DNA of 64,000 bases, taken from IMG/VR virus record IMGVR_UViG_3300023257_000007, positions 124,001-188,000 of that record, one strand, 5' to 3'. A program made the translations under genes and the position numbers. Under the pieces are notes generated by a model. That model saw only the letters and a program-made list of their open reading frames with translations, did not search any database and had not been told where the DNA came from. Below are positions 12,711 through 31,382 of this stretch, piece by piece. Every line of letters begins with the position of its first letter. Position 1 is the stretch's first letter.

Positions 12711-15236
12711 ATGAATTTTTATGACAGAAACACAGTCTATGAATCTACATTAAAATATTTTAAAGGTGATCAACTCTCAGCTAATGTATGGATTAATAAA
12801 TACGCACTCAAAGACTCAAATGGAAATATATATGAACTTACACCAGATGATATGCATAAAAGATTATCTAAAGAATTACATAGAATAGAATCCAAATATA
12901 TAAACCCAATATCAGAAGAAGAAATATATGATCTTATCAAAGATTTTAAATATATAGTTCCACAAGGTGGTTCAATGTCAGGGATAGGAAATAATTTACA
13001 AACTGTTTCACTTAGCAATTGTTTCGTTGTTGGAAATGAAGCAGATTCATATGGTGGAATATTTATGGCGGATCAAGAACAAGCACAACTTATGAAAAGA
13101 AGAGGAGGAGTTGGTCACGATATGTCTCACATTAGACCAAAAGGTTTTCCTGTTAAAAATTCAGCATTATCATCAACAGGTATAGTTCCATTTATGGAAA
13201 GATATTCAAATACAACAAGAGAAGTTGCACAAGATGGTAGAAGAGGTGCTCTTATGTTATCATGTTCAATAAAACATCCAGATATTGAAGAATTTATAGA
13301 TGCTAAAATGGAACAAGGTAAAGTTACAGGTGCAAACGTATCTGTTAAAATTACCGACGACTTTATGAAAGCCGCTTTAGAAGATAGTGTATTTTTTCAA
13401 CAATATCCAATTGTTAGTGATAATCCAGTTATCGCAAAAGAAGTAAATGCTAAAAACATTTGGGATAAAATTGTGCATAATGCTTGGAAAAGTGCTGAAC
13501 CTGGTATAATGTTTTGGGATACTATGATTAATGAATCTATTCCAGATTGCTACTCAGATTTAGGCTATAAAACAGTATCAACAAATCCATGTGGTGAGAT
13601 CCCTTTATGTCCGTATGATTCTTGTAGATTACTAGCTATTAATCTTTATTCTTATGTTAAAGATCCTTTCACCAAAAATGCTAAATTTAACTATGAATTA
13701 TTTGGCGAACATGTAATAATCGCACAAAGATTTATGGATGATATTATCGATCTAGAAATAGAAAAAATTGATAGTATACTTAAAAAAATTAAAAGTGATC
13801 CAGAAAATCAATTAATCAAACAAGTAGAAATAGATCTTTGGAAAAAGATACAACATAAAGCTAAAGAAGGTAGAAGAACAGGATTAGGCGTAACAGCCGA
13901 AGGTGATATGTTAGCAGCTCTCAATATTAAATATGGTACTAAAAAAGGAACCGAATTTTCAGCAAAAATACACAAATTATTAGCTATCGAAGCATATACA
14001 TCATCTTGTATCATGGCTGAAGAAAGAGGCGCTTTTGAGATATATGATTTTGATAGAGAAAAGAACAATCCTCTTATTAAAAGATTATTTGAAGCAAAAC
14101 CAGAACTTGAAGAACTACACAAAAAACATGGTAGAAGAAATATTGCATTATTAACTATTGCACCAACTGGAACAGTATCTCTAATGACACAAACAACATC
14201 AGGAATTGAACCGGTATTTCAGTTATATTATAAAAGAAATAGAAAAGTAAATCCTAATGACAAAGATTCTAGAGTTGATTTTGTAGATGAAATAGGTGAT
14301 GCATGGGAATCATATAATGTATTTCATCCAAAATTCTTCAAATGGCTTAAAATTAATGATTACAATATTGAAAAAGTTAAGTTGATGTCAAATAATGATA
14401 TTGCTGTAGTAATTGAAAAAACACCTTGGGCTGGTGCAACATCAGCCGATGTAGATTGGCTTGAAAAAGTTAAAATGCAAGGAGAAATTCAAAAATGGGT
14501 TGATCATTCTATTAGTGTAACAGTTAATTTACCTAAAGAAGTAACAGAAGAAATGGTTTCTAAAGTATATGAAGAAGCATGGAAATCTGGTTGTAAAGGT
14601 ATAACAGTTTATAGAGAAGGTTCTAGGAGTGGTGTATTAGTTTCAACAAATGATGATGAAAAGAAAACACTTGAACAAATTATTAAAGAAAACAATGCTC
14701 CTCGAAGACCAAAAAATATGGAATGTGATATTCTTAGATTCCAAAACAAAGGCGAAAAATGGATCGGTTTTGTAGGTTTATTAGAAGGACAACCTTATGA
14801 AATATTTACTGGTATTATTGATTCTTTCAATATTCCAACATATGTAGAAAAAGGTGTGGTTAGAAAAATGAGAGATGAAAATGGTAAATCTAGATATGAT
14901 TTTGTATATGAAGATAAAGATGGATATGAAGTTATTATGACTGGTTTAAGTAGAGCCTTCAATAGAGAATATTGGAATACAGGTAAATTCATCTCTGCTA
15001 TTTTAAGACACGGTATGCCATTACCAAATGTAATTGCTTTAATGGACTCAATTAGTTTAGATGGTGATTATATAGGAACTTGGAAATCAGGTGTTAAGAG
15101 AATGCTTAAAAAATACATTAAAGATAATACAACAATATCAGCAGTTTGTCCAGAATGTGGACAAGATACATTAGTATTTAATAGTGGTTGTGTACAATGC
15201 ACAAACCCAGAATGTGTTTATTCAAAATGTGAATAA
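12711..15236 (+). CDS. nrdJ: Class II (adenosylcobalamin-dependent) ribonucleotide reductase, Bacteroidota type
   Basis: SNCFV, TNPCGEIPL, IAPTGT, GCKGITVYREGSR and a C-terminal CPECG...CVQC zinc ribbon; N-terminus 'KYFKGD.L.A.VWINKYALKD' resembles Bacteroidales NrdJ. Confidence 0.9.
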   Translation: MNFYDRNTVYESTLKYFKGDQLSANVWINKYALKDSNGNIYELTPDDMHKRLSKELHRIESKYINPISEEEIYDLIKDFKYIVPQGGSMSGIGNNLQTVSLSNCFVVGNEADSYGGIFMADQEQAQLMKRRGGVGHDMSHIRPKGFPVKNSALSSTGIVPFMERYSNTTREVAQDGRRGALMLSCSIKHPDIEEFIDAKMEQGKVTGANVSVKITDDFMKAALEDSVFFQQYPIVSDNPVIAKEVNAKNIWDKIVHNAWKSAEPGIMFWDTMINESIPDCYSDLGYKTVSTNPCGEIPLCPYDSCRLLAINLYSYVKDPFTKNAKFNYELFGEHVIIAQRFMDDIIDLEIEKIDSILKKIKSDPENQLIKQVEIDLWKKIQHKAKEGRRTGLGVTAEGDMLAALNIKYGTKKGTEFSAKIHKLLAIEAYTSSCIMAEERGAFEIYDFDREKNNPLIKRLFEAKPELEELHKKHGRRNIALLTIAPTGTVSLMTQTTSGIEPVFQLYYKRNRKVNPNDKDSRVDFVDEIGDAWESYNVFHPKFFKWLKINDYNIEKVKLMSNNDIAVVIEKTPWAGATSADVDWLEKVKMQGEIQKWVDHSISVTVNLPKEVTEEMVSKVYEEAWKSGCKGITVYREGSRSGVLVSTNDDEKKTLEQIIKENNAPRRPKNMECDILRFQNKGEKWIGFVGLLEGQPYEIFTGIIDSFNIPTYVEKGVVRKMRDENGKSRYDFVYEDKDGYEVIMTGLSRAFNREYWNTGKFISAILRHGMPLPNVIALMDSISLDGDYIGTWKSGVKRMLKKYIKDNTTISAVCPECGQDTLVFNSGCVQCTNPECVYSKCE

Positions 15237-15237
15237 T

Positions 15238-15540
15238 ATGTGGAAACCTAGAATAAAAAAGACAAAAGATGATCTCTACACAGAAATAAATCAAATTCTA
15301 ATAAAATCTGGTTTATCTGATGGAGAAAACTTCTATGGTTTAAATCACACAGAAGTTGTTACTATAGTTTACGAATATTGTAAGATATTAGAATTTAAAT
15401 TATATTTCAAATCTTTTAAAACTTTAGGAGTACCTCTAAGACAATTATATACTTGTTGTGAAAAACTTAGTATGTTAGAAAAAAAAGAAATACTGGAATT
15501 TCGAAAAACAATACCTACAAAGAAAAAAGATGACAAATAA
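15238..15540 (+). CDS. Hypothetical protein
   Basis: ATG 1 nt after the nrdJ stop (MWKPRIKK...); the ORF-track start at 15184 overlaps nrdJ and is unlikely. Confidence 0.6.
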   Translation: MWKPRIKKTKDDLYTEINQILIKSGLSDGENFYGLNHTEVVTIVYEYCKILEFKLYFKSFKTLGVPLRQLYTCCEKLSMLEKKEILEFRKTIPTKKKDDK

Positions 15541-15553
15541 AGTCATCTTTTTT
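15523..15553 (+). terminator. Intrinsic terminator
   Basis: AAAAAAGATGAC-aaataaa-GTCATCTTTTTT. Confidence 0.75.
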
Positions 15554-15659
15554 GTAAAAATAAATCACATGAAAGTTAAATATAGATTTTATTAAATTAT
15601 TAAATAAAAAATCCCAAGCTGAATCAGATTTTATAAAATTTTCTGATAAATTTGATTTC

Positions 15660-15920
15660 ATGGACTATAAAATGTGTGTTGAAATTACTAAAATTATAGA
15701 ATCTATACATAATTATGATGATTTCGATGATGATTTCGATGGTGTGTCATGTTTTACAGATATTACAAATCTTGATATATTTTGGGATATTGGTGAATTA
15801 TCAAAAATAGTAACATTGACTATTCTTATTGGTAGTTCAGAAATATTTTTATATACTATAAATAATGATGAAATATTTATGAATGAAACTTGTTTCTATG
15901 TAATTCAACAATCTTATTAA
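15660..15920 (+). CDS. Hypothetical protein, possibly frameshifted from an ATG at 15569
   Basis: The reading frame stays open upstream to 15573 (KLNIDFIKLLNKK...) but has no in-frame ATG there. Confidence 0.45.
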   Translation: MDYKMCVEITKIIESIHNYDDFDDDFDGVSCFTDITNLDIFWDIGELSKIVTLTILIGSSEIFLYTINNDEIFMNETCFYVIQQSY

Positions 15921-16626
15921 ACTCATCTAATAGTTCTTCACTATTTTCAGAATTATCAATATATTCTTTTACCAATTCCTCTACATCAAAAGATTCATCA
16001 TTGATAGTTATTGGTTCAGTTATATCTTTAGGGTAAGTAATCTTCTTAAAATCAAACTTAGATAAAACAATATCAAGTTTAAGTTTATGTTCAATAGCAT
16101 TTTCCGTTAATTCTAATTCAATCCAATTATTCTTAACCCATTCTTTGTCAATGCCTTCTAACTCATCAACATTATCAATTTTGACTTTACCAAATCTCGG
16201 ACTAGTTGTATTTTCATAGAATTTGTGAGTTCCACTATCTTCATCAATAACTACAAAGCCAATTTTTTTATAATCTCTTTTCAATTGATATAATCCATCA
16301 ATTTCATAATTTGCATCTATTTTATCATAATACTCAATATTTGGATAATATTTGAAAATATAATTTTTCTTCGAATTTTCTACTTTTACAGGTAAAATAG
16401 TTGATATATTATCTAATATTATTGCAACATAATATAATATATCTATATTAATGTTTTGTCCATTAAATATGTTGCCAGTTATATGAAGTGTGTCTTCTTT
16501 ATTTGCATTTTTATGTAATAAAGGAATGAAAATATTATTAAAATAATCTTGCATCATTTTAAAAATATCAGAATCATTATTTTTCCATCCAAACAAGGGA
16601 TTAGATATAACAAAGTTTTTAGACAT
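15877..16626 (-). CDS. Degenerate Mre11/SbcD/gp47-like protein, predicted catalytically inactive
   Basis: N-terminus 'FVISNPLFG...DYFNNIFIP...LHITGNIF' follows gp47 but with DxH changed to NPL and GD to GN; no GNH motif; gp47-like C-terminus (FYENTTSPRF...KNNWIEL). Confidence 0.55.
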   Translation of the reverse strand: MSKNFVISNPLFGWKNNDSDIFKMMQDYFNNIFIPLLHKNANKEDTLHITGNIFNGQNINIDILYYVAIILDNISTILPVKVENSKKNYIFKYYPNIEYYDKIDANYEIDGLYQLKRDYKKIGFVVIDEDSGTHKFYENTTSPRFGKVKIDNVDELEGIDKEWVKNNWIELELTENAIEHKLKLDIVLSKFDFKKITYPKDITEPITINDESFDVEELVKEYIDNSENSEELLDEFNKIVELHRNKFHS

Positions 16627-16643
16627 GTCTTTTATATTAAAAA

Positions 16644-17111
16644 TTAACCAGAAAGTTTACTTTTACAAATATTACCTAATTGTCCTAATGCTTTATAATT
16701 AATATTTTCAAACATTTCCCAAGTGACTACTTCTACATCTTCAAATCTTTGTGTTTGTGGTCCTTGTAAATTATGAATTTGTTGTGGTTTAGGGTATGAT
16801 ATAACTTCATTTAAACTATTTTCACCAATAAACTGGTTTAATCCGTTTGGATCATTGGCAGGTTTTCTTTTTTTATTTTGTTGAATATAAGGATTGCTGT
16901 TTGTTTGTGGAACACCATTAACTTTAATCTCACAATCTATATTCCATCCATCATTAAGATTTTCATTGATTTGATATTGACTCAAATCTGGAGTCTCATT
17001 TAATGATTCCATATCATCATACTGTGGAGTTTCATTTAAAGGTTTTAATTCCTCTTCACTATTATTGTTTTCTTGTACTTGTTTAAATGCTTTTAAATAT
17101 TCCTCATTCAT
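16644..17111 (-). CDS. Hypothetical protein
   Basis: 155-aa ORF behind TTTTTATATATAG. Confidence 0.6.
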   Translation of the reverse strand: MNEEYLKAFKQVQENNNSEEELKPLNETPQYDDMESLNETPDLSQYQINENLNDGWNIDCEIKVNGVPQTNSNPYIQQNKKRKPANDPNGLNQFIGENSLNEVISYPKPQQIHNLQGPQTQRFEDVEVVTWEMFENINYKALGQLGNICKSKLSG

Positions 17112-17144
17112 GACAAAATTTGTTATTTTTTCTATATATAAAAA

Positions 17145-17165
17145 AAACCAGTTATAAACTGGTTT
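17145..17165 (-). terminator. Intrinsic terminator whose U-tract abuts the next promoter
   Basis: AAACCAGTT-ata-AACTGGTTT followed on the - strand by TTTTTATATATAG. Confidence 0.6.
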
Positions 17166-17763
17166 AATTCAATGTATCTGTAAACTTAACAGTGGAAAAC
17201 TTTTTATTAAGTTGATTCTTTATTTTGTTCTTAAATGTATCATCCCATTCACCATCATATTTCAAATCATTAACAACAGATTTTTTAAAATCATTAAATT
17301 GTCTTTGAATAACTTCATAAGGTACATTTGATCTAATTTCACCATTATCAATTTGACTTCTTATTCTATGATTAGATATTTCTACACCAGGTCTAAAAAC
17401 AATAGCTGTTTTCTTAACATCAAGAAACTGTTTAATAGAGCTATTTCTTGTTGTACTATTTGTATTAATAGCATCTAAAACAGCCACACCATATTCTTTT
17501 AATAATACTTTAATTCTAGCATATGCAACTTCCCATGCTTTTTTAGATCTCCACCAATCTCCACTGTTTCCAGCATTTATGTCACCGTATAATTCTAATC
17601 TAATATCATCTGGCGCAATTCGAATATCATCAATTGTTAAGCCGTTCTTATCTAATATTTTTTTAACTTCTGGAAAATCATTTAAAAATACATTATTAAA
17701 ATAAGTTGATTTTCCGGAACCTGAAATTCCAATTGGAAAATATAGAATTGGTTTATTTGCCAT
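17164..17763 (-). CDS. P-loop kinase (AAA_33 / polynucleotide-kinase-like)
   Basis: GISGSGKS, 'APDDIRLEL', 'VLDAINTN...R', 'RIRSQ...VPYEVIQRQF'; no phosphatase domain. Confidence 0.75.
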   Translation of the reverse strand: MANKPILYFPIGISGSGKSTYFNNVFLNDFPEVKKILDKNGLTIDDIRIAPDDIRLELYGDINAGNSGDWWRSKKAWEVAYARIKVLLKEYGVAVLDAINTNSTTRNSSIKQFLDVKKTAIVFRPGVEISNHRIRSQIDNGEIRSNVPYEVIQRQFNDFKKSVVNDLKYDGEWDDTFKNKIKNQLNKKFSTVKFTDTLN

Positions 17764-17822
17764 ATTATTACGTTTTTTGATTTAACTTTAATTTATATAT
17801 AAAACAAATATAATAAATTTAT

Positions 17823-18683
17823 ATGAAAGAACCTGATGAAATTGAAAATTTTTTTACTTTTGAAAATGAAGATGAAGATGAAGAAAATAAAAAAGAAGCA
17901 AAAGAAGTTAAAAAAAGAATTGAAGAAGATCATATTAAAGAAGTAAAATCTAATATCTCTGAACTTGAAGATAATATTCAAAATATACTTGATGAAATAG
18001 AAGAACCCGTCGAAAACCTTTTTCCTACCAATGATTTATTACCAGATCTCGATATGGAAATTGATATTCATGATTATGAAAAAGATATTCAAATGGTTAA
18101 AATTGCAGCAAGTGAAACAATTACTTGTTTAGCTAATCTTTATCTTGATGGAGAAACAATGAAAAATAAAAATATTAATAGTATTATTAAAGACGACGCT
18201 AATAAATTATCAGAACTTAATTTTAATGTAACTCAAACTAAAAGAGCATTAATAATGTGTATGAGACAATTAGATTTAGGTATAAATGATCCTGAAATGT
18301 TTCAATCTGTTACTATGTTTCAAAAAGAAATGAGGGAAACAATCAAAATGGCGTATGGATTACAAATTCAAATGAAAGACTTCTATAAAGGACTTAAAAG
18401 TGAATTAGATGAACTTAATAAAGGTGACGATTTAGAAGATGAATTAGGTGTAAGTGAAATGAATATTATAGGTGACCCTAAAGAACTTAATAATATACTT
18501 GAAGCAATGCAAAATGATAGAACACTTTTAACTTATAATGAAGAAAGAAAAGAAAGAGAAGAAAGAGAAAGGCTAGAAGATGAAGAGTTCGAAGAAAATA
18601 GAAAAAGAAGATTAAAAGAAAAAGAATCTGAAGAAAAAGAAACTAAAAAAGAAAATATACCTAAAGAAGAAAATCCTGATTAA
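17823..18683 (+). CDS. Acidic coiled-coil protein, possibly terminase small subunit (gp16-like)
   Basis: Central 'GINDPEMFQSVTMFQKEMRETIK' resembles gp16 'HPRAFEV..QL.K......K'; late-type promoter upstream. Confidence 0.35.
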   Translation: MKEPDEIENFFTFENEDEDEENKKEAKEVKKRIEEDHIKEVKSNISELEDNIQNILDEIEEPVENLFPTNDLLPDLDMEIDIHDYEKDIQMVKIAASETITCLANLYLDGETMKNKNINSIIKDDANKLSELNFNVTQTKRALIMCMRQLDLGINDPEMFQSVTMFQKEMRETIKMAYGLQIQMKDFYKGLKSELDELNKGDDLEDELGVSEMNIIGDPKELNNILEAMQNDRTLLTYNEERKEREERERLEDEEFEENRKRRLKEKESEEKETKKENIPKEENPD

Positions 18684-18697
18684 AATCAGGATTTTCT
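18668..18697. terminator. Bidirectional terminator between convergent genes
   Basis: AGAAAATCCTGAT-taaa-ATCAGGATTTTCT overlaps both stop codons. Confidence 0.75.
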
Positions 18698-20134
18698 ATT
18701 TTGTAATTCCGTTAATTTAAAATAAAAATCTCGAGCTATTTTCTTTAAGTAATATGTACCCATTCCTTGCATGCCTGTTTTCTCGTTATCTGGATCTGGT
18801 ACTCTTTTACCATTTAAGTAGTTTAAACCACTAACATTTGTAATAAATTTATGACCCCCTGAATTTGATTGAATAATATCCCATGCCGTAACATACATAT
18901 CATTTAATATCTTTTTATCATTTTCACTTAATTTTATAAAAGGAACAGTCATCACAGCATCTAACACATTTTCAGATTGCTGATCTAAACCAACAATTTG
19001 ATCTTTAAATAAAGAAACTAAATCTTTAAATCTAAAACCAAATTCATTTGAAATATCTTTTGGAGCTTTATTTCTTGTACCTTTAGCAGCTCTGACCATA
19101 TCTTGTTCAGATATTCTCTTAATATTTTTAACAGTTATTTTAACGTTTTGTAAATTAGTTTTGAAATTATTTAATACATCTTGTGCAATATCGCCCAAGT
19201 TAATATGTTCAAATTTTGGATCTTTCTTTTTAAAAGGATTTGTTGAAACTTGAACTAATCCCATTGGCCAAGCCATAATAAAAAAATTAGCATCTGGATA
19301 TAATTTAAATGAAGCATATCTATCATATGAACCAGTATCAAACATTCTAGGACCACCATATTGCATCATTATATCATTCTTAACAACTAATTTTTTAAAA
19401 TTTTTAAGATTGTCAAAATATGTATTTGCATGTTTTTCAATTGATTCAGCAGGATCTAAACCTAAATCTTTAGCTAATTTCTTAATTTCTAAAAACATAC
19501 TAACTAAACTAGGTTTTGAATTTTCAACTAAACCTACTAAAAAACCAGGTTTATTTTTATAAGCCAATAATAGTTTATTTACAACAAATCCTAATTTCAT
19601 TCTATTTGATTTAGTTGATATATCTTTATTGGTTTTATAGAAAAATTGAATTACATCAGAAGGAGTTATATCTTGACTTGCATAATCTGCACTATCAACA
19701 GTATCAATCATATTAACATCTTCTGCTGAAAATATATCATTAGGTGAAATTTCACCGGAAATAGTACCAGCATTTGATTTAGCTTTCTTAAAATGTGCAG
19801 ACATAGTTTCTACGCCTATTTGCATATCATGGTGGTCTGTATGAATAACAAATTCTGTTTTACCGTGAGCAAAATCTACTAAAACAGCTAATGTACCGGG
19901 TTGTGGTTTATCTAAATGATATTCCATACCACCATATTGAATAGTATGATATCTTACTGTTTTAATACCATATTGTTTCAAATATTCTCTCATAGCAATA
20001 GCTGATGTAACACCATCTAAATCTACATGAAAATATATTTCAGCTTCATCAAAAGTTTTAGATATTTTTTTAATATCACGTATGCCAGATTCATTTAATT
20101 TCAGAAACTGATTATAACTTTCTAATAAACGCAT
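18686..20134 (-). CDS. DHH/DHHA1-family phosphoesterase with CTS-like leader
   Basis: HVDLDG (motif I), VDF (II), DHH (III) and a C-terminal SGGH; likely start MRLLESYNQFLKLNE (20134) rather than 20146. Confidence 0.8.
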   Translation of the reverse strand: MRLLESYNQFLKLNESGIRDIKKISKTFDEAEIYFHVDLDGVTSAIAMREYLKQYGIKTVRYHTIQYGGMEYHLDKPQPGTLAVLVDFAHGKTEFVIHTDHHDMQIGVETMSAHFKKAKSNAGTISGEISPNDIFSAEDVNMIDTVDSADYASQDITPSDVIQFFYKTNKDISTKSNRMKLGFVVNKLLLAYKNKPGFLVGLVENSKPSLVSMFLEIKKLAKDLGLDPAESIEKHANTYFDNLKNFKKLVVKNDIMMQYGGPRMFDTGSYDRYASFKLYPDANFFIMAWPMGLVQVSTNPFKKKDPKFEHINLGDIAQDVLNNFKTNLQNVKITVKNIKRISEQDMVRAAKGTRNKAPKDISNEFGFRFKDLVSLFKDQIVGLDQQSENVLDAVMTVPFIKLSENDKKILNDMYVTAWDIIQSNSGGHKFITNVSGLNYLNGKRVPDPDNEKTGMQGMGTYYLKKIARDFYFKLTELQNRKS

Positions 20135-20138
20135 GAAA

Positions 20139-20696
20139 TTAAACATTTTTTAACAGATTCATTAAATCATCATTTAATATCTGTAACACTTTTTTACCAT
20201 TTAGTTCAATTTGTGGGACATTCTTAATTATAGAAAAAACATCATTGCCCTCAACAACTATTTCACTAAATAATTTATCAAGTTGTGGATTTCTTCTATA
20301 ATAAGAAACTAAATTATCAACAAACTCTTTTAATTTTAATTCATGATTTTCATTATATTTCAAAACTAATAAAGATTTATCAGTTTGCTCTATTATCATG
20401 AAATGTAAATCATCTTTAGAATGATTATTTGATTCTAAAAGAGAATAAGCATCAGAAGGTTTATAATTATCTAAAAATTTAGCGACTTTGCCATTAAGTT
20501 TAAACCTAGGTTTTTTCCTACTAACATTTGGATCTCTGTTATCTCTTCTTGGAGGTTTAGATAACTCTTGAGCCATTGCAGCCAAATTAGCCTTCTTAAT
20601 CGGAATTTCCTTTGGAATTTCAGGAACAGAACTAGTAATAGTTTTTGAACTACCACCACCTGTTGATGCAAAATCACTATATTTTTTTAAGCCCAT
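20139..20696 (-). CDS. Hypothetical protein with leader-like N-terminus (MGLKKYSDF)
   Basis: 185-aa ORF in the same operon as the DHH gene. Confidence 0.65.
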   Translation of the reverse strand: MGLKKYSDFASTGGGSSKTITSSVPEIPKEIPIKKANLAAMAQELSKPPRRDNRDPNVSRKKPRFKLNGKVAKFLDNYKPSDAYSLLESNNHSKDDLHFMIIEQTDKSLLVLKYNENHELKLKEFVDNLVSYYRRNPQLDKLFSEIVVEGNDVFSIIKNVPQIELNGKKVLQILNDDLMNLLKNV

Positions 20697-20706
20697 TTTT
20701 TAATTT

Positions 20707-21228
20707 TTAAATTTCTTGACTACCTTGTTGTAACTGTTGACCTTGTTGTTGTAATTTCTGGCCTTGTTGTTGTAATTGCTGCCCTTGTGTTTGTAGATTT
20801 TGACCTTGTGCTTGTAAACCATCATCCTGTGCAGGAATATCCTGTGCAGTTTGTTGAGCTTGAGTTTCATCTGGAACATCTTGTAATGGTTGAACTTGTT
20901 GCGTTTGAGCTTGTTGCATTTGAGGTTGAACTTGTGCACCTTTTGCATAATTAGAACCCATTGCCATTGTAACAGGCAAATTCTCAATGTTCATATATGA
21001 TGAAGCGATATAGTTAACAATCATTTCAGCCATTTGTTCTGCACCATAAAGATCTTTAACATCTCTACCTGTCTCATCTTTAACTTTTTTAGTAAAAGCG
21101 TTAATTAATGATTTAGGTACATCAACGTTTGGTAATACTCTATAAACATCATCAATAGCAAATACAGTTTCTTGAACTTTATTTCCTTTTGAATTTTTAA
21201 AATCATTTAGATTTGTTAAATGTTTCAT
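20707..21228 (-). CDS. Hypothetical protein with CTS-like leader and Gln-rich heptad tail
   Basis: MKHLTNLNDF...; QGQNLQT/QGQQLQQ/QGQKLQQ/QGQQLQQ repeats (21-nt tandem, about 20737-20820); TTAATATATAA upstream. Confidence 0.7.
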   Translation of the reverse strand: MKHLTNLNDFKNSKGNKVQETVFAIDDVYRVLPNVDVPKSLINAFTKKVKDETGRDVKDLYGAEQMAEMIVNYIASSYMNIENLPVTMAMGSNYAKGAQVQPQMQQAQTQQVQPLQDVPDETQAQQTAQDIPAQDDGLQAQGQNLQTQGQQLQQQGQKLQQQGQQLQQGSQEI

Positions 21229-21281
21229 AATCGGATTTTTTATTTTTTATTATATATTAAACTTTATTTCTCATTTTTCTT

Positions 21282-22109
21282 TTAGAATATATTCTTAATA
21301 TCCTGCCATGTGGTTCTTCTAGTAATTCCTAAACCTATACCAATATAAGGACCTACTCCTTTATTCATAGGATTATACATAAAACCAACTGAAAACGTTG
21401 GACCAATTCCCCATCTATATTTAGGCATAATAGCTTTTAATACTTTAGATTTTTGTGGATCTATCAAAGCACCATCCAAATTAGCAATACTGAAACCTGG
21501 ATAATCAGATTTAATAAATATTTTTAATTGACCTTTTTCTTCAATTAAACCAGTTGTTAAACCTAAACTAAATTCATCTTTTAATAATGTTGTTATAATA
21601 GGTTTTACAATTTTACCACTATCTATCATAAATCTAGATTCACCAACTAATGTTCTACTATTATATTTATCAAACTGTTTAAAATAATCCCATTTCAACC
21701 CATTTGAACCATCAGGATAAACAGTATCAGTAGTGTGTATTATAATAGGTTCTTTATTTTTAATCTTAGCTAAAGCAGTTGCTAGATAAATAACATCACC
21801 CCTTTGTTTTTTAACTTCATCATATAATTCTTTATTCTTTTCTTTTAGTTCTTTCTTATCAGCAATTAATACAGCTCTCTCATATTGTAATTCATTATTC
21901 TTATTATAAACCTTTATTAAAGTATCTTTATAATATGATTCATTTTGTTCTTTAATTATTAATTTATCTTGTAATTTTCCAACTTTATCACATTTCTGAA
22001 TAAAAAGTAATATTACAATCGCACCAGCAATTAATAAAACTGTTCTTTGATTTTTAGGATCTGAAATAAAACCCCATATTTTCTTTAATATTTCCCAAAA
22101 TTTACCCAT
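21282..22109 (-). CDS. Membrane-anchored coiled-coil protein with C-terminal amphipathic beta-hairpin (spanin-like, Bacteroidota DUF6808-like)
   Basis: TM segment VLLIAGAIVILLFIQ, coiled coil, and end RWGIGPTFSVGFMY...GVGPYIGIGLGI. Confidence 0.45.
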   Translation of the reverse strand: MGKFWEILKKIWGFISDPKNQRTVLLIAGAIVILLFIQKCDKVGKLQDKLIIKEQNESYYKDTLIKVYNKNNELQYERAVLIADKKELKEKNKELYDEVKKQRGDVIYLATALAKIKNKEPIIIHTTDTVYPDGSNGLKWDYFKQFDKYNSRTLVGESRFMIDSGKIVKPIITTLLKDEFSLGLTTGLIEEKGQLKIFIKSDYPGFSIANLDGALIDPQKSKVLKAIMPKYRWGIGPTFSVGFMYNPMNKGVGPYIGIGLGITRRTTWQDIKNIF

Positions 22110-22111
22110 TC

Positions 22112-24064
22112 TTATAAACTATTTTTTGACGAATCTATTGGTGGTGTACCATCTCTAGAAGTTTTATTACTTGGATTAAACACCGCACTCATAGAACTAT
22201 TTGGTATTGAATTATCACCAGTAATTTTATTTTCACCTAGTACCCAATAACCTTTATTCCAAATTCCATTATACCAATTACCAAGATAAAATTTTCCATT
22301 AATAAAAGTTCCATTATACCAATCACCAGACCAAAAATATCCATCATTAAATGTACCACCACTCCATCTACTAAAAAATATATTAGTTTTTGTTGATGAA
22401 CCATTTTTCCAATCAGCATATATTATATCGCTATTTTCTGCTATACCATTTTCCCAAATTGTATTTGTTGTTCCTGTCATGCCTAAAATCGGATCATAAA
22501 TATTCTCTGTTTCAGAATTGAAAAATTTACCATTTTTCCATGTACCATGACTCCATGTTGAATTATTAAACTCGCCTTGATACCAAGTACCAGAACTCCA
22601 TGTAGAATTTATCATTTTTCCATTATACCATGAACCATCTCTCCAACCACCATTATTAAAAGTTCCACCATACCACACACCGTCATACCACGTACCAGTT
22701 TCAAATATTCCATTATTCCAGATTCCATTATTCCATGTAGATCCACTACCTTTAAAAGCACCATTATTAAAAATTCCATCATACCATGTAACATAATTAA
22801 TTATATTACCATTATTAAAAGTTCCATCATACCAGTATATTTTATAATAATATATCAATAATTTTAAATCTCCACTCATATCACCACCATTAAATGTACC
22901 ACCTGACCACATACAATCTATATTATCTGCATTAAAATTGCCATTATTAAAAACACCATTATACCATTGTGAATCTACAAATGTTCCATCATTAAAAGTA
23001 CCACCAGTCCAATTTGATCTATAAAAATACCCATCATTAAAAATACCATTTAACCAAGTTTTTGAACTATTAAAATAACCAAATATCCCATTATTCCAAA
23101 TACCATCATACCAAACACTTGGTCCAAATTTTTGACTTTCTTCACTTAATAAAGAATAATCTTCACCTATATCATATTCCCATGTACCATAACTCCAAAT
23201 ACAATTATTTTCCACCGTACAATTTTTAAAATATCCACCAGTAATTATGTAATCACTTATCACACATTCTTCAAAATATCCACCACTTATAATATGATTA
23301 GAGCCATTAAAAACTCCATTATAATAAATACCAGATTCTATATTAGTTATATAAATATTTGAACTAATTGAATTTTCACAACCAATATAACTATAACCAT
23401 TATTATTATTATTTTTACTTATAGATAAAGATAATATATCATCTTCAGTATTAACTAATGTAGGATACATATAATCATATTTTAATTCAAATGTTGTACC
23501 AGTAGAATTACAAACAAAAAAGATACCTTGATTTACATTAACATCACCAATCAAATCACATTCTTTTATAATAGCTGCATCTATATAACCATCATTTATT
23601 GTGATATTTTCACATTTAACCAAACTAATATAATGATTTGTTAAATTAACATTTGAAGGTAAATCTTCATATTTTTTATTAATAATAATTAGATTTCTAT
23701 TACTATCTACATATATTACTTTATATCCATTATCTTTAACATAAGGAAAATTTAAATCATATCTTCTTTCATAAAATGTATCAATATTACCAGTTGCATC
23801 ATCAAAACTTGAAATATAAACTATATCTCCTATTTTAATATTAGAATCTAACATTGTATAAAACCCAAGATATTCATTATATCTTTCTGGTATGTTTACA
23901 ATCTTAACAGAATTTCTTGTTTCAGGATATTTTGCAAGTTCTCTTTTTCTAACAGGATCAATAGGATCTGATAAATTAACATTAATACCCAATTCTAATG
24001 ATAGACCCTTTATAATTCCATTTGAATTTAATGTGTCAACAGGTATGTTTGTTATTCTAGCCAT
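22112..24064 (-). CDS. Pentapeptide-periodic (W/F-x-x-G-x) repeat protein, probable beta-solenoid
   Basis: Long WYDGIWNNGIF/WTGGTFNDGTF run; likely start MARITNIP (24064), just downstream of palindromic TTTTATATATAAAA at 24082-24095. Confidence 0.7.
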   Translation of the reverse strand: MARITNIPVDTLNSNGIIKGLSLELGINVNLSDPIDPVRKRELAKYPETRNSVKIVNIPERYNEYLGFYTMLDSNIKIGDIVYISSFDDATGNIDTFYERRYDLNFPYVKDNGYKVIYVDSNRNLIIINKKYEDLPSNVNLTNHYISLVKCENITINDGYIDAAIIKECDLIGDVNVNQGIFFVCNSTGTTFELKYDYMYPTLVNTEDDILSLSISKNNNNNGYSYIGCENSISSNIYITNIESGIYYNGVFNGSNHIISGGYFEECVISDYIITGGYFKNCTVENNCIWSYGTWEYDIGEDYSLLSEESQKFGPSVWYDGIWNNGIFGYFNSSKTWLNGIFNDGYFYRSNWTGGTFNDGTFVDSQWYNGVFNNGNFNADNIDCMWSGGTFNGGDMSGDLKLLIYYYKIYWYDGTFNNGNIINYVTWYDGIFNNGAFKGSGSTWNNGIWNNGIFETGTWYDGVWYGGTFNNGGWRDGSWYNGKMINSTWSSGTWYQGEFNNSTWSHGTWKNGKFFNSETENIYDPILGMTGTTNTIWENGIAENSDIIYADWKNGSSTKTNIFFSRWSGGTFNDGYFWSGDWYNGTFINGKFYLGNWYNGIWNKGYWVLGENKITGDNSIPNSSMSAVFNPSNKTSRDGTPPIDSSKNSL

Positions 24065-25516: not shown

Positions 25517-26491
25517 ATGAAAATATATAAATTTAATTCTTTTATATTTGAAAAAAGTTCTCTAACTTCAATTGGAATACCAAATGAAGTTCTTAAACAA
25601 ATTCAAATAGATTACGAATTACCACATAATATAAAATGGGAAGAACTTACATTTTCAAACACCATCAAATCATCACTAGAAAATGATGACAAAAATCTAT
25701 ATATTGAAATAAATAAAGAAGGCACTAAAGTAAACGTAATAACATCAATAAGAAAAAATAAAAAGAAAATCTACATATTAGACGAATATAAATATAATTT
25801 CGGATGGGAAAAATCAGAAAGAATTGATATAACATTCGCACCAATTGTACAAAAAATGTCATTTAAAAGTATATATTATCACTGTGAATCTAAAAACTTT
25901 AAACTCACATCCAAAAAAGAAAGATCACTTGAAAATATAAATGTCCAATATGAAAATTTTAATACACAATTTAAAAAAGACTTTACTAACAAATTCATAA
26001 GTATAATTAAAAAAGATAAATATAATCTACTAGACAATACTATAAAAGAAAACGGTCTAACAACATTTGATGAATATTTATATGATTTTGAATCACAATG
26101 TTCAGAAGAATTAAAAAGATATTTAACAATTAAAGAACTTATTTCTAGATATGGTAAAGATAAAATATTTAGATCATTTATGTATTTCATTAAAACAAAT
26201 AACTTAAAATTATTTGAATCAAATACTTCATTAAAACAAACAATAAGTTTATTCGTTGACGATTATTGGTATGCAATGGACGAATTAGAAGGAGTATTAC
26301 ATGACTTAGGATATAAAAGAATGAGTGATAGTGGTAAAGATGTTCTTTTTGTAGAAAAAGAAGGCGAAACTAGATTATATTGGTACGGAAAAGCTTTTGA
26401 AATTAAAAATGAACCACATTATAAAATGCCAGAAGACTGGGCAACTTTTGTTAAAGAAATAACACAAAATTTTGAAGATATAAAAATATGA
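25517..26491 (+). CDS. Hypothetical protein with CTS-like leader (MKIYKFNSFIFE) and an internal second leader-like motif
   Basis: TTAATATATA 5 nt before ATG 25517; internal LKLFES near 26204. Confidence 0.7.
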   Translation: MKIYKFNSFIFEKSSLTSIGIPNEVLKQIQIDYELPHNIKWEELTFSNTIKSSLENDDKNLYIEINKEGTKVNVITSIRKNKKKIYILDEYKYNFGWEKSERIDITFAPIVQKMSFKSIYYHCESKNFKLTSKKERSLENINVQYENFNTQFKKDFTNKFISIIKKDKYNLLDNTIKENGLTTFDEYLYDFESQCSEELKRYLTIKELISRYGKDKIFRSFMYFIKTNNLKLFESNTSLKQTISLFVDDYWYAMDELEGVLHDLGYKRMSDSGKDVLFVEKEGETRLYWYGKAFEIKNEPHYKMPEDWATFVKEITQNFEDIKI

Positions 26492-26700
26492 AACATATAA
26501 AAACTTTTGAACAACATGCTGCAGATTATTATGAAGGAGAAACTTCATCTTCACCTTCAGGACCAGTTAAAATGAACTGTCCTAATTGTGGTAATGAAAT
26601 GAATGTAATGTTCCATGAAATTAGTCCAAAACCAATCACTTGTGAATTTTGTGGTGATAAAATAGAATATCCATATGGTCAAAGTTGGCGTTGGGCATAA
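26488..26700 (+). CDS. Small zinc-ribbon protein with CTS-like leader (MKHIKTFEQH)
   Basis: CPNC...CEFC; ATGA overlap with the upstream stop. Confidence 0.7.
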   Translation: MKHIKTFEQHAADYYEGETSSSPSGPVKMNCPNCGNEMNVMFHEISPKPITCEFCGDKIEYPYGQSWRWA

Positions 26701-29437: not shown

Positions 29438-30091
29438 TTATCTACTTAATAAACCTATTTTAGAATAAACATTTTTCCAATCATCCTCATTGTTTATTAT
29501 ATATTCAGGTTCTCTGGAATCTAAAATAGTTTCAGCATTTTCAATTGTTACATAATCAACGGCTTTTATTTTAATTCCATCATTAATTCTAACTCTATAA
29601 GTTTTAAATGTTTCACTCAAAATTTGTGCTATATATAAAGGAAAAGTACCATCATCAATATACATAACAGCAGAAAGTTTTGCATTTGGCATCTCAACGT
29701 ACAACTTATTCTCTGTATCTATCAAATGATATTTGGATAAGCTTTCTTTAATTCCGTTATGTTTAATAACATCACTATTCTTAACATAATAATAAGAATC
29801 TGTAGAAGTTTCTTTAAAAACTAATGATGCATCAATTTTTTTACAGAATTGATTTAACATTTTTCTTTGAAAATTGCCTTTATCTAATAAATTACTATTA
29901 ATTAATCCACTAAACTTATATTTATCTTCTAATATAACAACAATTTTTCTATTTGCATTATCATAATACAAACAATCTATATCCAACATATAATTAGATC
30001 TAGATAAACTTCTATGTCCTTCAGAAAAGACATTACTTTTACCCCATTTTCTTTTATAATCTTCAAATATGTTTTTAATTCTTTGTATCAT
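29438..30091 (-). CDS. Hypothetical protein
   Basis: 217-aa ORF overlapping the end of the CCA gene. Confidence 0.6.
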   Translation of the reverse strand: MIQRIKNIFEDYKRKWGKSNVFSEGHRSLSRSNYMLDIDCLYYDNANRKIVVILEDKYKFSGLINSNLLDKGNFQRKMLNQFCKKIDASLVFKETSTDSYYYVKNSDVIKHNGIKESLSKYHLIDTENKLYVEMPNAKLSAVMYIDDGTFPLYIAQILSETFKTYRVRINDGIKIKAVDYVTIENAETILDSREPEYIINNEDDWKNVYSKIGLLSR

Positions 30092-31382
30092 TACTCATAT
30101 ATTCATTTTTAAATCTTTCGTATTCTATTCTTCTCATTTCTTCACCTAAAGCCTTTCCATGAAATCCCTTTTGCATTAACTCTTGTGAATTTTTTAAAAA
30201 ACCATCACTACAATATTTAATGAAAGCTTCAGTTATATTTGAATATAATCCCTGAGACTTAGTATATAATCTTAATATATTATCATCAATACCAAATCTA
30301 GTCTTATTTTTAGCTAACTGATAAATATTTGTCATCCACATATCACCTGTAGATTCTTCTATTATCTTTTTCTCATAATTAAATAGAAAAATAATATAAT
30401 CAATCAAATTATTTTGCAACTTACAATCAATTAATTTGTTGGTTAAATTCGAATCATCTGAACTTGGAGTCATCAAAATAGGTAAAATTATCCTATTATC
30501 GAAAAGTGAAAAATTCACCCAAGGAACCTCTATTTTAATTCCAGGGAAAATCTCATCAAACATATCAAATTCATCAAGTAATCTTAAATATTTAATAAAC
30601 ATAGACATATCATTTGCATCTCTCGCATGACCTAACATTTTATTCCATTCACCATTTTTAGTGTCAAATATTCTTTCAAATGAAACATCATCTTTCTCAG
30701 ATATTCCATGTAATCTATGATCCATAGTTAATGCATTCTTTACATTTTCACTTATTTTACCATTAGTTCTTGCACAAAATCTAAACAATCTTAATATTCT
30801 CAATCTATCTTCATTAAACCTTTCATAAGGTTCACCAACAGTTTTAATAAGTCCTTTCTTTAAATCTTCAATACCACCAACATAATCAATGATTTTCTTA
30901 CTACCAAGATCATAAAACATTGCATTAATTGTTAAATCTCTTCTTAAAACATCATCTTGTATTGTAACATTTGAACCAATTTCTACTTTTTGATCATCAC
31001 CTTTAACATCTCTACCTTTAGCAATATCTTTTCTATAGGTTGCTAATTCATGACCTAATGGTTCTAAATCTGTATAAATTCTTAATACTCCAAAATTTTG
31101 TCCTTGCTCTTCTTCAGAAACATAACCACCATTCCAATCTTCTAATATCTCTTTAGATTCATCTGGCATTGCATCTGTAACTAAATCAAAATCTTTAGGT
31201 TTTTTTCCTTGTAAATAATCTCTAGGAGCGCCACCTACAACATATAATTCCTTACCATACTTTTTAAATCTTTCATATATTTCTACAATATCTTCGGGTA
31301 TGAACATATCTTTAGCTTTAACAGTTTTCTTTTGCATTTTATTTTCATTTAAAAATTCAGAATATTTATACAATTTATTCAT
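30075..31382 (-). CDS. cca: CCA-adding enzyme / tRNA nucleotidyltransferase (class II NTase) with CTS-like leader
   Basis: VVGGAPRD...DFDLVTD, ELATYR, RRDLTINAM, RFNEDRLRILR; N-terminus MNKLYKYSEFLNE. Confidence 0.85.
   Translation of the reverse strand: MNKLYKYSEFLNENKMQKKTVKAKDMFIPEDIVEIYERFKKYGKELYVVGGAPRDYLQGKKPKDFDLVTDAMPDESKEILEDWNGGYVSEEEQGQNFGVLRIYTDLEPLGHELATYRKDIAKGRDVKGDDQKVEIGSNVTIQDDVLRRDLTINAMFYDLGSKKIIDYVGGIEDLKKGLIKTVGEPYERFNEDRLRILRLFRFCARTNGKISENVKNALTMDHRLHGISEKDDVSFERIFDTKNGEWNKMLGHARDANDMSMFIKYLRLLDEFDMFDEIFPGIKIEVPWVNFSLFDNRIILPILMTPSSDDSNLTNKLIDCKLQNNLIDYIIFLFNYEKKIIEESTGDMWMTNIYQLAKNKTRFGIDDNILRLYTKSQGLYSNITEAFIKYCSDGFLKNSQELMQKGFHGKALGEEMRRIEYERFKNEYMSNDTKN

What the first reader, a model, noticed from the sequence alone, without database searches (positions are those of the whole stretch)
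18686..20134. DHH/DHHA1 phosphoesterase carrying the capsid tag: candidate injected signal-degrading anti-defence enzyme
Seen: the full DxD/D/DHH/GGH motif set behind MRLLESYNQFLKLNE|SG. Known: DHH/DHHA1 enzymes (NrnA, GdpP/Pde2) hydrolyse short oligonucleotides and cyclic or linear dinucleotides, and CBASS and type III CRISPR signal with cyclic nucleotides. Inference: delivery with the genome could remove immune second messengers or nanoRNAs immediately on entry. The substrate cannot be read from the sequence.
Basis: partly seen in the sequence, partly recalled or inferred. Interest (0 to 1): 0.75.

Follow-up and report, generated by a model that had tools for sequence, protein, structure and literature searches.

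The report
Capsid-tagged DHH phosphoesterase of a megaphage
A giant T4-like phage from salt-lake metagenomes encodes a very divergent but catalytically intact DHH/DHHA1 phosphoesterase. Its N-terminus looks like the phage T4 signal that loads proteins into the capsid for injection, so it may be an enzyme delivered with the DNA; neither its target nor its packaging has been measured.

Summary
Window 18686-20134 (-) encodes a 482-aa protein with every DHH catalytic motif and a GGH motif. An AlphaFold model (pLDDT 85) matches two-domain DHH/DHHA1 enzymes best: PAP phosphatase Z 17.8, pGpG phosphodiesterase PggH Z 15.9. RecJ scores lower, and no OB domain was seen.

It belongs to a large, self-contained viral family found in T4-like jumbo and mega phages. 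The family falls below Pfam and NCBIfam cut-offs.

Residues 1-15 lie outside the fold. They carry Y-x-x-F-L and then L-N-E|S-G, which matches the targeting and processing determinants of the T4 capsid targeting sequence (MKTYQEFIAE|A).

Across 182 homologues with a prefix, P1 is Glu in 97% and P3 is Leu/Ile in 89%. Eight homologues start exactly at M-S-G. The common 6-8-residue prefixes resemble the 6-residue propeptide of T4 Alt (ITE-6), an injected enzyme.

The genome has a T4-type prohead protease. The gene ends a three-gene block behind the same promoter-like motif that precedes the capsid gene.

Some homologues are fused to peptidoglycan hydrolase, SAM-lyase, SET or GNAT domains.

Packaging is therefore plausible (about 0.55) but unproven. 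The anti-signalling role is one of several possible functions, and nucleotide salvage is a serious rival.

The parts
18686..20134 (-). ORF of the DHH/DHHA1-like phosphoesterase (482 aa plus stop)
   Evidence: Model pLDDT 85.4, pTM 0.85. Fold matches.
20144..20146 (-). Alternative upstream ATG (would add MFNF); judged not to be the start
   Evidence: Homologues and database proteins start at MR(L/I)LES.
20090..20134 (-). 15-residue N-terminal extension MRLLESYNQFLKLNE, a candidate capsid-targeting propeptide with Y7 and F10 at i/i+3
   Evidence: Low model confidence and outside the DHH core. T4 CTS determinants at residues 4, 7, 8 and 10 (PMC9026906). T4 CTS sequence.
20084..20098 (-). Predicted prohead-protease junction L13-N14-E15 | S16-G17
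   Evidence: E15 and G17 are invariant. Family-wide, P1=E in 177/182 and P3=L/I in 162/182; 8 members start at M-S-G.
19625..20086 (-). DHH catalytic domain (about residues 17-170)
   Evidence: Pfam DHH 26.1 bits over residues 37-126. PggH profile hit, E 0.0016. Fold matches.
20012..20029 (-). Motif I, H36-V-D38-L-D40-G41
19874..19876 (-). Motif II, D87
19829..19837 (-). Motif III, D100-H101-H102
19694..19696 (-). Motif IV, D147 (VDSAD)
   Evidence: The same D..SA.F context is seen in PggH.
19400..19624 (-). Helical linker/insert (about residues 171-245), longer than in 310-330-aa NrnA/PggH-type enzymes
   Evidence: secondary structure of the model. Only 256-279 residues align to the small enzymes.
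18689..19399 (-). DHHA1-like domain with a helical insert (about residues 246-482)
   Evidence: fold alignments span model residues 28-478. No Pfam DHHA1 hit. No PDB sequence hit.
18851..18859 (-). G426-G427-H428 (SGGH), the DHHA1 signature
20139..20696 (-). Upstream ORF (185 aa) starting MGLKKYSDF (K-x-Y-x-x-F); its stop lies 4 nt before the DHH start
   Evidence: A syntenic ORF starting MGLQKFNDF is present in L009.
20707..21228 (-). First ORF of the three-gene block (173 aa) starting MKHLTNLNDF (tag score 6.7)
   Evidence: A syntenic ORF is present in L009.
21250..21258 (-). AATATATAA, a late-promoter-like motif 30 nt upstream of the first ORF
   Evidence: Genome-wide the motif peaks at -30..-26 from start codons. 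It precedes the capsid gene and the baseplate operon but not the replication genes.

Best explanation
The gene encodes an active metal-dependent DHH/DHHA1 phosphoesterase. It belongs to a viral family that is far from NrnA, GdpP and RecJ in sequence but shares their two-domain fold.

In this phage the enzyme is probably made late, with a 15-residue N-terminal propeptide that works like the T4 capsid targeting sequence. The proposed steps are:
1. The aromatic pair Y7/F10 docks the protein to the prohead core.
2. The T4-type prohead protease cuts after L13-N14-E15, leaving S16-G17 as the mature N-terminus.
3. The enzyme stays in the filled head and enters the host with the DNA, as T4 Alt and the internal proteins do.
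4. In the cell it hydrolyses small phosphodiester substrates: linear dinucleotides or nanoRNA, pAp-like nucleotides, or cyclic oligonucleotide signals.

Shown here: the motifs, the fold, the family, the junction statistics, the presence of a T4-type protease, and the promoter-like motif.
Inferred: packaging, cleavage, injection and the substrate class.
Speculative: that the targets are immune second messengers.
For: Enzyme:
- All DHH motifs and GGH are invariant in 39 homologues.
- The model has pLDDT 85.4.
- VIA-align gives Z 17.8 to an archaeal PAP phosphatase, 15.9 to PggH, and 13.2 to TmPDE and DhhP, all spanning model residues 15/28-480 and standing far above unrelated rows at Z about 6.
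- Foldseek gives probability 1.0 to DhhP, PggH, TmPDE, NrnA and GdpP.
- The only PDB profile hit is PggH, E 0.0016.

Propeptide:
- Residues 1-15 lie outside the aligned core and have low confidence.
- The T4 CTS is MKTYQEFIAE. Its targeting depends on residues 4 and 7, and its processing on residues 8 and 10 (PMC9026906).
- Across the family P1=E in 177/182 and P3=L/I in 162/182.
- Eight members begin M-S-G. The start was checked on DNA for three: two have in-frame stops shortly upstream, and in the third the upstream frame is open but offers no L/I-x-E start. Glu is therefore dispensable for the enzyme yet almost obligatory whenever a prefix exists.
- 12 of 217 members carry an exact aromatic-x-x-aromatic-[LIVM]-x-E prefix. 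The two 634-642-kb megaphage orthologues start M(I/L)xKYxQFINEE|VG.
- T4 Alt, an injected enzyme, loses only six residues, at ITE-6 (PMC5694885). This matches the common MKKLIKE|SG prefixes.

Machinery:
- The genome has a gp23-like capsid protein.
- An 811-aa ORF aligns to T4 gp21 at E 5e-6, with the GE(L/F)xHP and VSSR motifs conserved.

Timing:
- The AATATATAA motif found upstream of the capsid gene also heads this three-gene block.

Fusions:
- Homologues carry C-terminal PG_binding_1, GH19, M23, TseH, SAM-lyase/DUF3293, SET or GNAT domains. These domain types are described for injected polyvalent proteins (PMC7824862).
Against: - No virion proteome, transcript data or biochemistry exists. 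No RNA run was listed.
- The DHH N-terminus is only a borderline match to the genome's main tag.
- The main tag shows no excess of L/I-x-E sites after it.
- Tagged genes are not enriched in late-type operons (23/61 against 144/429, p=0.56).
- Tagged proteins are slightly acidic on average, whereas the T4 internal proteins are highly basic.
- The tag also sits on RNase H, a CCA-adding enzyme and a nucleotidase.
- A complete 321-kb relative has the enzyme but no such tag family.
- In the majority clade the neighbours are NUDIX, CTP synthase, thymidylate synthase and glutamine synthetase genes. This fits a cytoplasmic role in nucleotide metabolism.
- The M-S-G variants cannot be targeted by a propeptide.
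- The invariant E-S/T-G could still be a structural cap of helix 1.
Confidence: 0.4

Rival explanations
1. A cytoplasmic nucleotide-salvage enzyme. On this view it is a nanoRNase/dinucleotidase or pAp phosphatase that completes the breakdown of host RNA and DNA fragments to mononucleotides for phage replication. That would make it a functional analogue of NrnA/Orn or T4 DexA. The N-terminal extension would be a lineage-typical leader with no role in the capsid.
For: - The closest folds are a PAP phosphatase, PggH, TmPDE and NrnA.
- Neighbours in the majority clade are NUDIX, CTP synthase, thymidylate synthase and glutamine synthetase genes.
- The enzyme is conserved across a whole clade, including genomes without the tag family and members starting at M-S-G.
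- The same tag sits on other nucleic-acid enzymes.
- Jumbo phages often carry NrnA-like DHH proteins.
Against: - It does not explain why P1=Glu and P3=Leu/Ile are kept in about 90-97% of prefixed members while Glu is absent from unprefixed ones.
- It does not explain the repeated appearance of exact T4-CTS-like prefixes.
- It does not explain the fusions to peptidoglycan hydrolases, SAM lyase, SET and GNAT.
- It does not explain the promoter-like motif shared with structural genes.
Confidence: 0.3
2. A RecJ-like single-strand-specific exonuclease working in recombination, repair or host DNA degradation.
For: - The RecJ cores are significant fold matches (Z 13.3 Thermus RecJ, 12.6 archaeal RecJ2).
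- Weak NCBIfam matches to RecJ around motif I.
- The window carries UvsX, UvsW, gp32 and an SbcD-like ORF nearby.
Against: - TIGR00644 scores 16.4 bits against a cut-off of 396.9.
- Only the core of RecJ aligns (chain residues 59-423 of 648), and no OB-fold domain was seen in the model.
- The small-nucleotide enzymes score higher.
Confidence: 0.1
3. A virion-associated protein whose main role is at the cell envelope during entry or lysis, working with peptidoglycan hydrolases. The DHH module would then act on a non-nucleotide phosphodiester or serve as a scaffold.
For: - C-terminal fusions to PG_binding_1+GH19, M23 and TseH-like domains.
- Lysozyme genes sit immediately upstream in several relatives, and a GH108 gene plus a T4 baseplate gene sit beside one.
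Against: - The window's protein has no such domain.
- No DHH enzyme is known to me that acts on cell-wall polymers (my own knowledge).
- The conserved catalytic set is that of the nucleotide phosphoesterases.
Confidence: 0.1
4. A non-catalytic Cdc45/GAN-like replisome accessory factor.
For: Cdc45 and archaeal RecJ-Cdc45 are fold matches (Z 8-12) of similar length.
Against: All metal-binding and catalytic residues are invariant. The phage uses a DnaB-type helicase, not CMG.
Confidence: 0.03

Closest known systems
T4 Alt (ADP-ribosyltransferase carried in the head and injected)
   Same: - A large enzyme rather than a small basic protein.
- A short N-terminal propeptide ending I/L-x-E that is removed by the prohead protease: six residues at ITE-6 in Alt (PMC5694885).
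- Encoded by a phage with T4-type capsid and prohead-protease genes.
   Different: - A different fold and chemistry: ADP-ribosylation against phosphoester hydrolysis.
- Packaging of the DHH protein is only inferred.
- Alt is also processed at its C-terminus; this was not examined here.
T4 internal proteins IPI/IPII/IPIII with the capsid targeting sequence MKTYQEFIAE
   Same: - The signal is N-terminal.
- Aromatic residues at i/i+3 are followed by I/L-x-E and cleavage.
- Unrelated proteins share the same leader.
- Some family members carry near-identical leaders, for example MAKTYKEYLAEE and MISKYNQFINEE.
   Different: - The window's leader is 15 residues, with two extra residues between F-L and L-N-E.
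- The cargo is a 467-aa enzyme, not a small basic protein.
- About 10% of this genome's ORFs carry a related leader, far more than in T4.
PggH (Vibrio cholerae pGpG phosphodiesterase, PDB 7d62) and the archaeal PAP phosphatase (PDB 8a8k)
   Same: - Best sequence-profile hit (E 0.0016) and top fold hits (Z 15.9 and 17.8) over both domains.
- The DxD, D, DHH, D and GGH motifs are shared, as is the D..SA.F context of motif IV.
   Different: - 13-14% identity.
- About 150 extra residues in helical segments.
- No match above any curated family cut-off.
- Substrate unknown.
NrnA/Pde2, GdpP, DhhP and TmPDE (nanoRNA, pApA and c-di-AMP phosphodiesterases)
   Same: Two-domain DHH/DHHA1 fold and catalytic motifs.
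   Different: - No signalling or membrane domains.
- The NrnA RxRxR motif, recalled from memory and not tested rigorously, was not seen.
- The family is viral only, with no close cellular fold cluster.
DHH phosphodiesterases of jumbo phages predicted to counter nucleotide signals (Iyer et al. 2021, PMC7824862)
   Same: The same superfamily, the same kind of host genome (jumbo phages) and the same proposed role.
   Different: - The roughly 300-aa jumbo-phage DHH proteins (AR9, PhiEaH1, PaBG and others) are only distant fold matches (TM 0.3-0.5).
- tblastn against 50,697 phage records finds this family only in four uncultured huge phages.
- That paper does not propose capsid delivery for the DHH enzymes.
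Known phage enzymes that destroy immune nucleotides (Acb1, Apyc1, AcrIII-1)
   Same: The proposed outcome only: removal of cyclic nucleotide messengers.
   Different: Different folds by my own knowledge (2H, metallo-beta-lactamase and DUF1874); none of them came up in the fold searches. As far as I know they are made after infection rather than carried in the virion.

Membership tests
DHH superfamily (DHH + DHHA1 phosphoesterases) | Motifs I-IV: DxD, D, DHH, D | tested here: met
   D38/D40, D87, D100-H101-H102 and D147 are present and invariant in 39 homologues.
DHH superfamily (DHH + DHHA1 phosphoesterases) | GGGH motif in the second domain | tested here: met
   S425-G426-G427-H428; GGH is invariant. 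The first Gly is replaced by Ser.
DHH superfamily (DHH + DHHA1 phosphoesterases) | Two-domain DHH/DHHA1 fold | tested here: met
   VIA-align Z 17.8, 15.9 and 13-14 over model residues 15/28-480. Foldseek probability 1.0 to more than 50 DHH/DHHA1 chains.
DHH superfamily (DHH + DHHA1 phosphoesterases) | Pfam DHH (PF01368) above the gathering score | tested here: not met
   26.1 bits against a cut-off of 28.1. 26 of 48 relatives hit the model, all below the cut-off.
DHH superfamily (DHH + DHHA1 phosphoesterases) | Pfam DHHA1 (PF02272) match | tested here: not met
   No match at E<=10 in the whole genome, while all 14 control genomes matched.
NrnA/PggH-type nanoRNase or dinucleotide phosphodiesterase | Compact architecture of about 310-330 aa | tested here: not met
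   482 aa; only 256-279 residues align, and there are extra helical segments.
NrnA/PggH-type nanoRNase or dinucleotide phosphodiesterase | Hydrolysis of pGpG, pApA, nanoRNA or pAp | not testable with these tools
   Needs an enzyme assay.
RecJ exonuclease | Equivalog model TIGR00644 or archaeal RecJ NF053576 above its cut-off | tested here: not met
   16.4 bits against 396.9, and 13.1 bits against 360.
RecJ exonuclease | OB-fold domain closing a ssDNA hole | tested here: not met
   The protein ends with the DHHA1-like domain. Only residues 59-423 of the 648-residue Thermus RecJ chain align.
T4-type capsid-targeted, protease-processed head protein | N-terminal propeptide of about 6-20 residues with aromatic targeting residues at i/i+3 | tested here: met
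   Y7 and F10 in a 15-residue extension. The T4 determinants are at residues 4 and 7.
T4-type capsid-targeted, protease-processed head protein | Cleavage motif I/L-x-E at the end of the propeptide | tested here: met
   L13-N14-E15. Family-wide P1=E 97% and P3=L/I 89%. T4 examples: IAE-10 and ITE-6.
T4-type capsid-targeted, protease-processed head protein | A T4-type prohead protease and gp23-type capsid encoded by the same genome | tested here: met
   Peptidase_S77 region in an 811-aa ORF. It aligns to T4 gp21 at E 5e-6, including the His and Ser motifs. Gp23 scores 85.5 bits.
T4-type capsid-targeted, protease-processed head protein | The protein is present in virions with a processed N-terminus | not testable with these tools
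   No cultured relative. No RNA or proteome data were found.
Genome's main N-terminal tag family MK[YH]LKT[YF][NE]E | Score above the 99.9th percentile of internal windows with the family's position matrix | tested here: inconclusive
   MRLLESYNQF scores 2.9 against a threshold of 2.95. The orthologue in L009, MQFLKNFENF, scores 8.3.

The most novel reading that the evidence does not exclude
This whole viral DHH/DHHA1 family is a capsid-loaded effector of T4-like jumbo and mega phages, processed at a conserved L/I-x-E|S/T-G site. On this reading it is injected with the genome and destroys host cyclic or linear oligonucleotide immune messengers (CBASS, type III CRISPR or similar) before any phage gene is expressed. 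That would be the first pre-packaged, rather than newly synthesised, enzyme against nucleotide signalling. The roughly 10% of ORFs carrying the related N-terminal leader would then be a very large repertoire of injected proteins.
Probability: 0.15. Interest if true: 0.85.

Novelty: new variant of a known kind. Interest (0 to 1): 0.62.

Why it matters
As far as I know, the phage enzymes known to degrade immune nucleotides are made only after infection starts. An enzyme delivered with the DNA would act before the host alarm can build up.

The family is abundant: more than 3,000 sequence clusters at 90% identity, in aquatic metagenomes. It is unannotated and invisible to curated models. Assigning it a fold, an active site and a likely processing site makes it directly testable.

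The conserved junction and the T4-like leaders also offer a sequence rule for predicting the injected proteome of uncultured T4-related giant phages.

If the salvage explanation is right instead, the finding is an ordinary auxiliary nucleotide-metabolism gene with an unusual leader.

Tried and rejected
- Megablast of window 15000-24000 against 50,697 phage records gave no match.
- A whole-length profile search of PDB sequences, and a separate search with the C-terminal half, gave no significant hit. The only matches were chance-level ones to nucleotidyltransferases (GSYxRYT), at E about 0.7. The putative D-x-D is not conserved, so this lead was dropped.
- Pfam DHHA1 gave no hit in the genome. 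NCBIfam gave only sub-threshold RecJ fragments.
- The AlphaFold DB cluster search found no close cellular fold cluster (TM<0.5).
- Complex prediction, with the protease domain and DHH residues 1-45, returned 'no answer' with a score of 0.00. This is not evidence either way.
- Sequencing runs: only DNA runs (salt lake and marine metagenomes) hold the locus, and no RNA run was listed.
- NCLDV origin of the 280-326-kb relatives was considered because of the DnaJ, SET and glutamine synthetase neighbours. I rejected it mainly because the three complete 317-326-kb records carry gp23-type capsid genes. No NCLDV capsid hit was found either, but that search matched nothing in its control genomes, so it is not informative.
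- Positional analogy to T4 e -> ipIII: a lysozyme gene sits upstream of the DHH gene in some relatives. Those lysozymes are not detectably similar to T4 e by BLAST, so the analogy carries no weight.
- Enrichment of tagged genes in late-type operons was tested and not found.
- Enrichment of L/I-x-E after the main tag was tested and not found.
- A literature search for the tag peptides found nothing.
Full report
**What is there.**
- Window 18686-20134 (-) is an ORF of 482 codons.
- The longest frame begins 12 nt further up, at ATG 20146, which overlaps the preceding gene.
- The start at 20134 (MRLLES...) agrees with the database protein P0001 and with the 70%-identical homologue P0002. It also agrees with the syntenic relative L009, where the leader begins at Met1 four bases after the upstream stop.
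- The window is part of a 344,634-bp virus record with 25% G+C, which CheckV rates as 48% complete.
- The record carries T4-type genes: a gp23-like capsid protein, UvsX, UvsW, gp32 and a gp5-like hub.
- Near-identical DNA is present in several salt-lake metagenomes and one marine metagenome.

**The enzyme.**
They are invariant in 39 homologues.
- Curated models barely see the protein. Pfam DHH scores 26.1 bits, under the 28.1 cut-off. Pfam DHHA1 gives nothing. NCBIfam gives only sub-threshold RecJ fragments.
- An AlphaFold model built from the alignment is confident (pLDDT 85.4, pTM 0.85).
- An exhaustive structural search places the model among two-domain DHH/DHHA1 enzymes over residues 15/28-480: PAP phosphatase 8a8k Z 17.8, PggH 7d62 Z 15.9, Thermus RecJ core 13.3, TmPDE 13.2, DhhP 13.2, NrnA/Pde2 12.6 and Cdc45 about 10. 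Unrelated chains score about 6. Foldseek agrees.
- The only sequence-profile hit in the PDB is PggH (E 0.0016), and it shares the D..SA.F context of motif IV.
- The protein is about 150 residues longer than those small enzymes because of helical segments. No RecJ-type OB domain was seen in the model.
- My reading is a catalytically competent phosphoesterase whose closest relatives act on small nucleotides. The substrate cannot be read from the sequence.

**The family.**
- A word-indexed search found more than 3,251 clusters at E<=0.001, typically 45-49% identical over the full length, on contigs up to 337 kb.
- An exhaustive profile search of 1.84 billion representatives found only 479 clusters at 50% identity. 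The family is therefore self-contained and does not merge with cellular DHH families. No close cellular fold cluster exists.
- Three complete 317-326-kb relatives carry gp23-type capsid genes.
- Among 50,697 deposited phage genomes, only four uncultured huge phages (634-735 kb) have the family.
- The roughly 300-aa DHH proteins of cultured jumbo phages are only distant fold matches.

**The N-terminal extension.**
- Residues 1-15 are outside the conserved fold and are modelled with low confidence.
- The T4 capsid targeting sequence is MKTYQEFIAE (PMC8442874; T4 ipII and ipIII read).
- In T4, targeting depends mainly on residues 4 and 7, and processing on residues 8 and 10 (PMC9026906). That gives an aromatic pair at i/i+3 followed by I-x-E.
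- The window's leader has Y7-N-Q-F10-L11 and then L13-N14-E15|S16-G17.
- I could place the junction in 190 family members, and 182 of those have a prefix. Among the 182, the residue before S/T-G is Glu in 177 and P3 is Leu or Ile in 162.
- Eight members begin exactly M-S-G. For three of them I checked the DNA: two have stop codons shortly upstream, one of these with a clear ribosome-binding site, and in the third the upstream frame is open but offers no plausible earlier start.
- Glu is thus not needed by the enzyme, yet it is almost always there when a prefix exists. That is what a processing determinant would look like.
- Twelve of 217 members carry an exact aromatic-x-x-aromatic-[LIVM]-x-E leader, for example MAKTYKEYLAEE. 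The two megaphage orthologues start MISKYNQFINEE|VG and MLRKYGQFINEE|VG.
- Most members have only 6-8 residues, such as MKKLIKE|SG. This is not an argument against packaging, because T4 Alt, an injected enzyme, loses just six residues at ITE-6 (PMC5694885).

**The machinery and timing.**
- An 811-aa ORF next to the capsid gene aligns to T4 gp21 (E 5e-6), including the GE(L/F)xHP and VSSR motifs.
- The motif [AT]ATATATAA peaks sharply 26-30 nt upstream of start codons.
- It precedes the capsid gene, the baseplate operon and other large ORFs. It does not precede UvsX, the helicase, RNR, gp32, UvsW or the topoisomerase.
- One copy (21250-21258) heads the block 20707-21228 / 20139-20696 / DHH. The first two ORFs of that block also begin with K-x-[YL]-x-x-F leaders, and the block is syntenic in L009.
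- I read the motif as a late-type promoter. This is inference from position only.

**The tag family at large.**
- 46 of 490 crude ORFs begin MK[YH]LKT[YF][NE]E, where 0.5 are expected. Four more do so from an internal Met.
- 21 ORFs fit the strict T4-like pattern, against 1 of 361 in the complete 321-kb relative G002, which lacks the tag family.
- The upstream DNA is not conserved and Leu codons vary synonymously, so the peptide is what is selected.
- The same leaders occur in the 634-642-kb megaphages.
- Several results weaken the 'capsid tag' label for the generic tag:
  - There is no excess of L/I-x-E after it.
  - Tagged genes are not enriched in late-type operons.
  - Tagged proteins are slightly acidic on average.
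  - The tag sits on an RNase H, a CCA-adding enzyme, a nucleotidase-like protein and LRR proteins.
- The DHH leader itself is a borderline match to the main motif.

**Other context.**
- Homologues carry C-terminal PG_binding_1, GH19, M23, TseH-like, SAM-lyase/DUF3293, SET, GNAT and other domains.
- Lysozyme genes often sit next to the gene.
- Such domains are typical of polyvalent proteins injected with phage DNA (PMC7824862).
- Against this, the majority-clade neighbours include NUDIX, CTP synthase, thymidylate synthase and glutamine synthetase genes. That fits nucleotide salvage.

**Verdict.**
- I put the probability that it is an active DHH/DHHA1 phosphoesterase at about 0.85.
- I put the probability that it is loaded into the capsid through a cleavable leader, like T4 Alt, at about 0.55.
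- I put the probability that its purpose is to destroy immune messengers at about 0.15-0.2. Nucleotide salvage is the main rival.
- A counter-signalling role for jumbo-phage DHH enzymes has been suggested before (PMC7824862). The conserved processing-site signature and the delivery model are what is new here.

Noticed in passing
whole genome; in the window e.g. 197-646(-), 689-961(-), 26488-26700(+), 32400-32633(+), 52042-52377(-), 55757-56530(-), 60417-60809(-): About 10% of ORFs (46-50 of 490) start with the near-invariant peptide MK[YH]LKT[YF][NE]E. Many are small ORFs in tandem arrays. The upstream DNA is not conserved. The same leaders occur in the 634-642-kb megaphages LR745206 and LR756502 but not in a complete 321-kb relative. 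The function is unknown.
   Followed up: partly
whole genome; in the window 36025-36447(-) and 52042-52377(-); arrays at genome 299-343 kb: 49 of 490 ORFs end in ..[EN][GAS]xK[LM]GL[LM]-COOH. 34 are strict matches within the last 8 residues, and there are no internal matches anywhere in the proteome. Most are ORFs of about 100 aa in tandem arrays; 15 also carry the N-terminal tag. It could be a second, C-terminal signal or the end of a large paralogous family.
   Followed up: partly
window 30075-31382(-); genome 292159-292764(+), 109032-109559(+), 97218-97820(-): Tag-like leaders precede the catalytic domains of a CCA-adding enzyme (MNKLYKYSEFLNEN, Pfam domain from residue 46), an RNase H (domain from residue 22), an NT5C-like nucleotidase and an LRR protein.
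   Followed up: partly
window 21250-21258(-), and upstream of 8711, 24064, 51170, 9185, 17763, 17823 and others: The motif [AT]ATATATAA peaks 26-30 nt before start codons. It marks the capsid and baseplate operons but not the replication genes. It is probably this phage's counterpart of the T4 late promoter TATAAATA.
   Followed up: partly
genome 5467-7902(-) (outside the window): The T4 gp21-like prohead protease domain (first 190 aa or so) is fused to about 600 further residues with a weak coiled-coil-type match. This may be a protease-scaffold fusion.
   Followed up: partly
window 22112-24064(-): A 650-aa protein made largely of W/Y-x-[ND]-G-x-F-type repeats (GTFNNG, WYDG ...), behind its own late-type motif on the same strand as the DHH block. 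No family match was found.
   Followed up: no
window 56646-59909(+): A 1087-aa ORF whose N-terminus looks, from memory only, like a single-chain type IIA topoisomerase. Not scanned against any library.
   Followed up: no
window 15877-17763(-): An SbcD-like C-terminal fragment (249 aa) and an AAA_33 / polynucleotide-kinase-like P-loop protein (199 aa) lie just downstream of the DHH locus. The kinase-like gene is also syntenic in L009.
   Followed up: partly
relatives L007/L008, L005/L006, L121, L122: In the majority clade the DHH gene is almost always followed by a convergent DUF192 gene (PF02643), with NUDIX or glutamine synthetase genes beyond it. This is a conserved pair of unknown meaning.
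   Followed up: no
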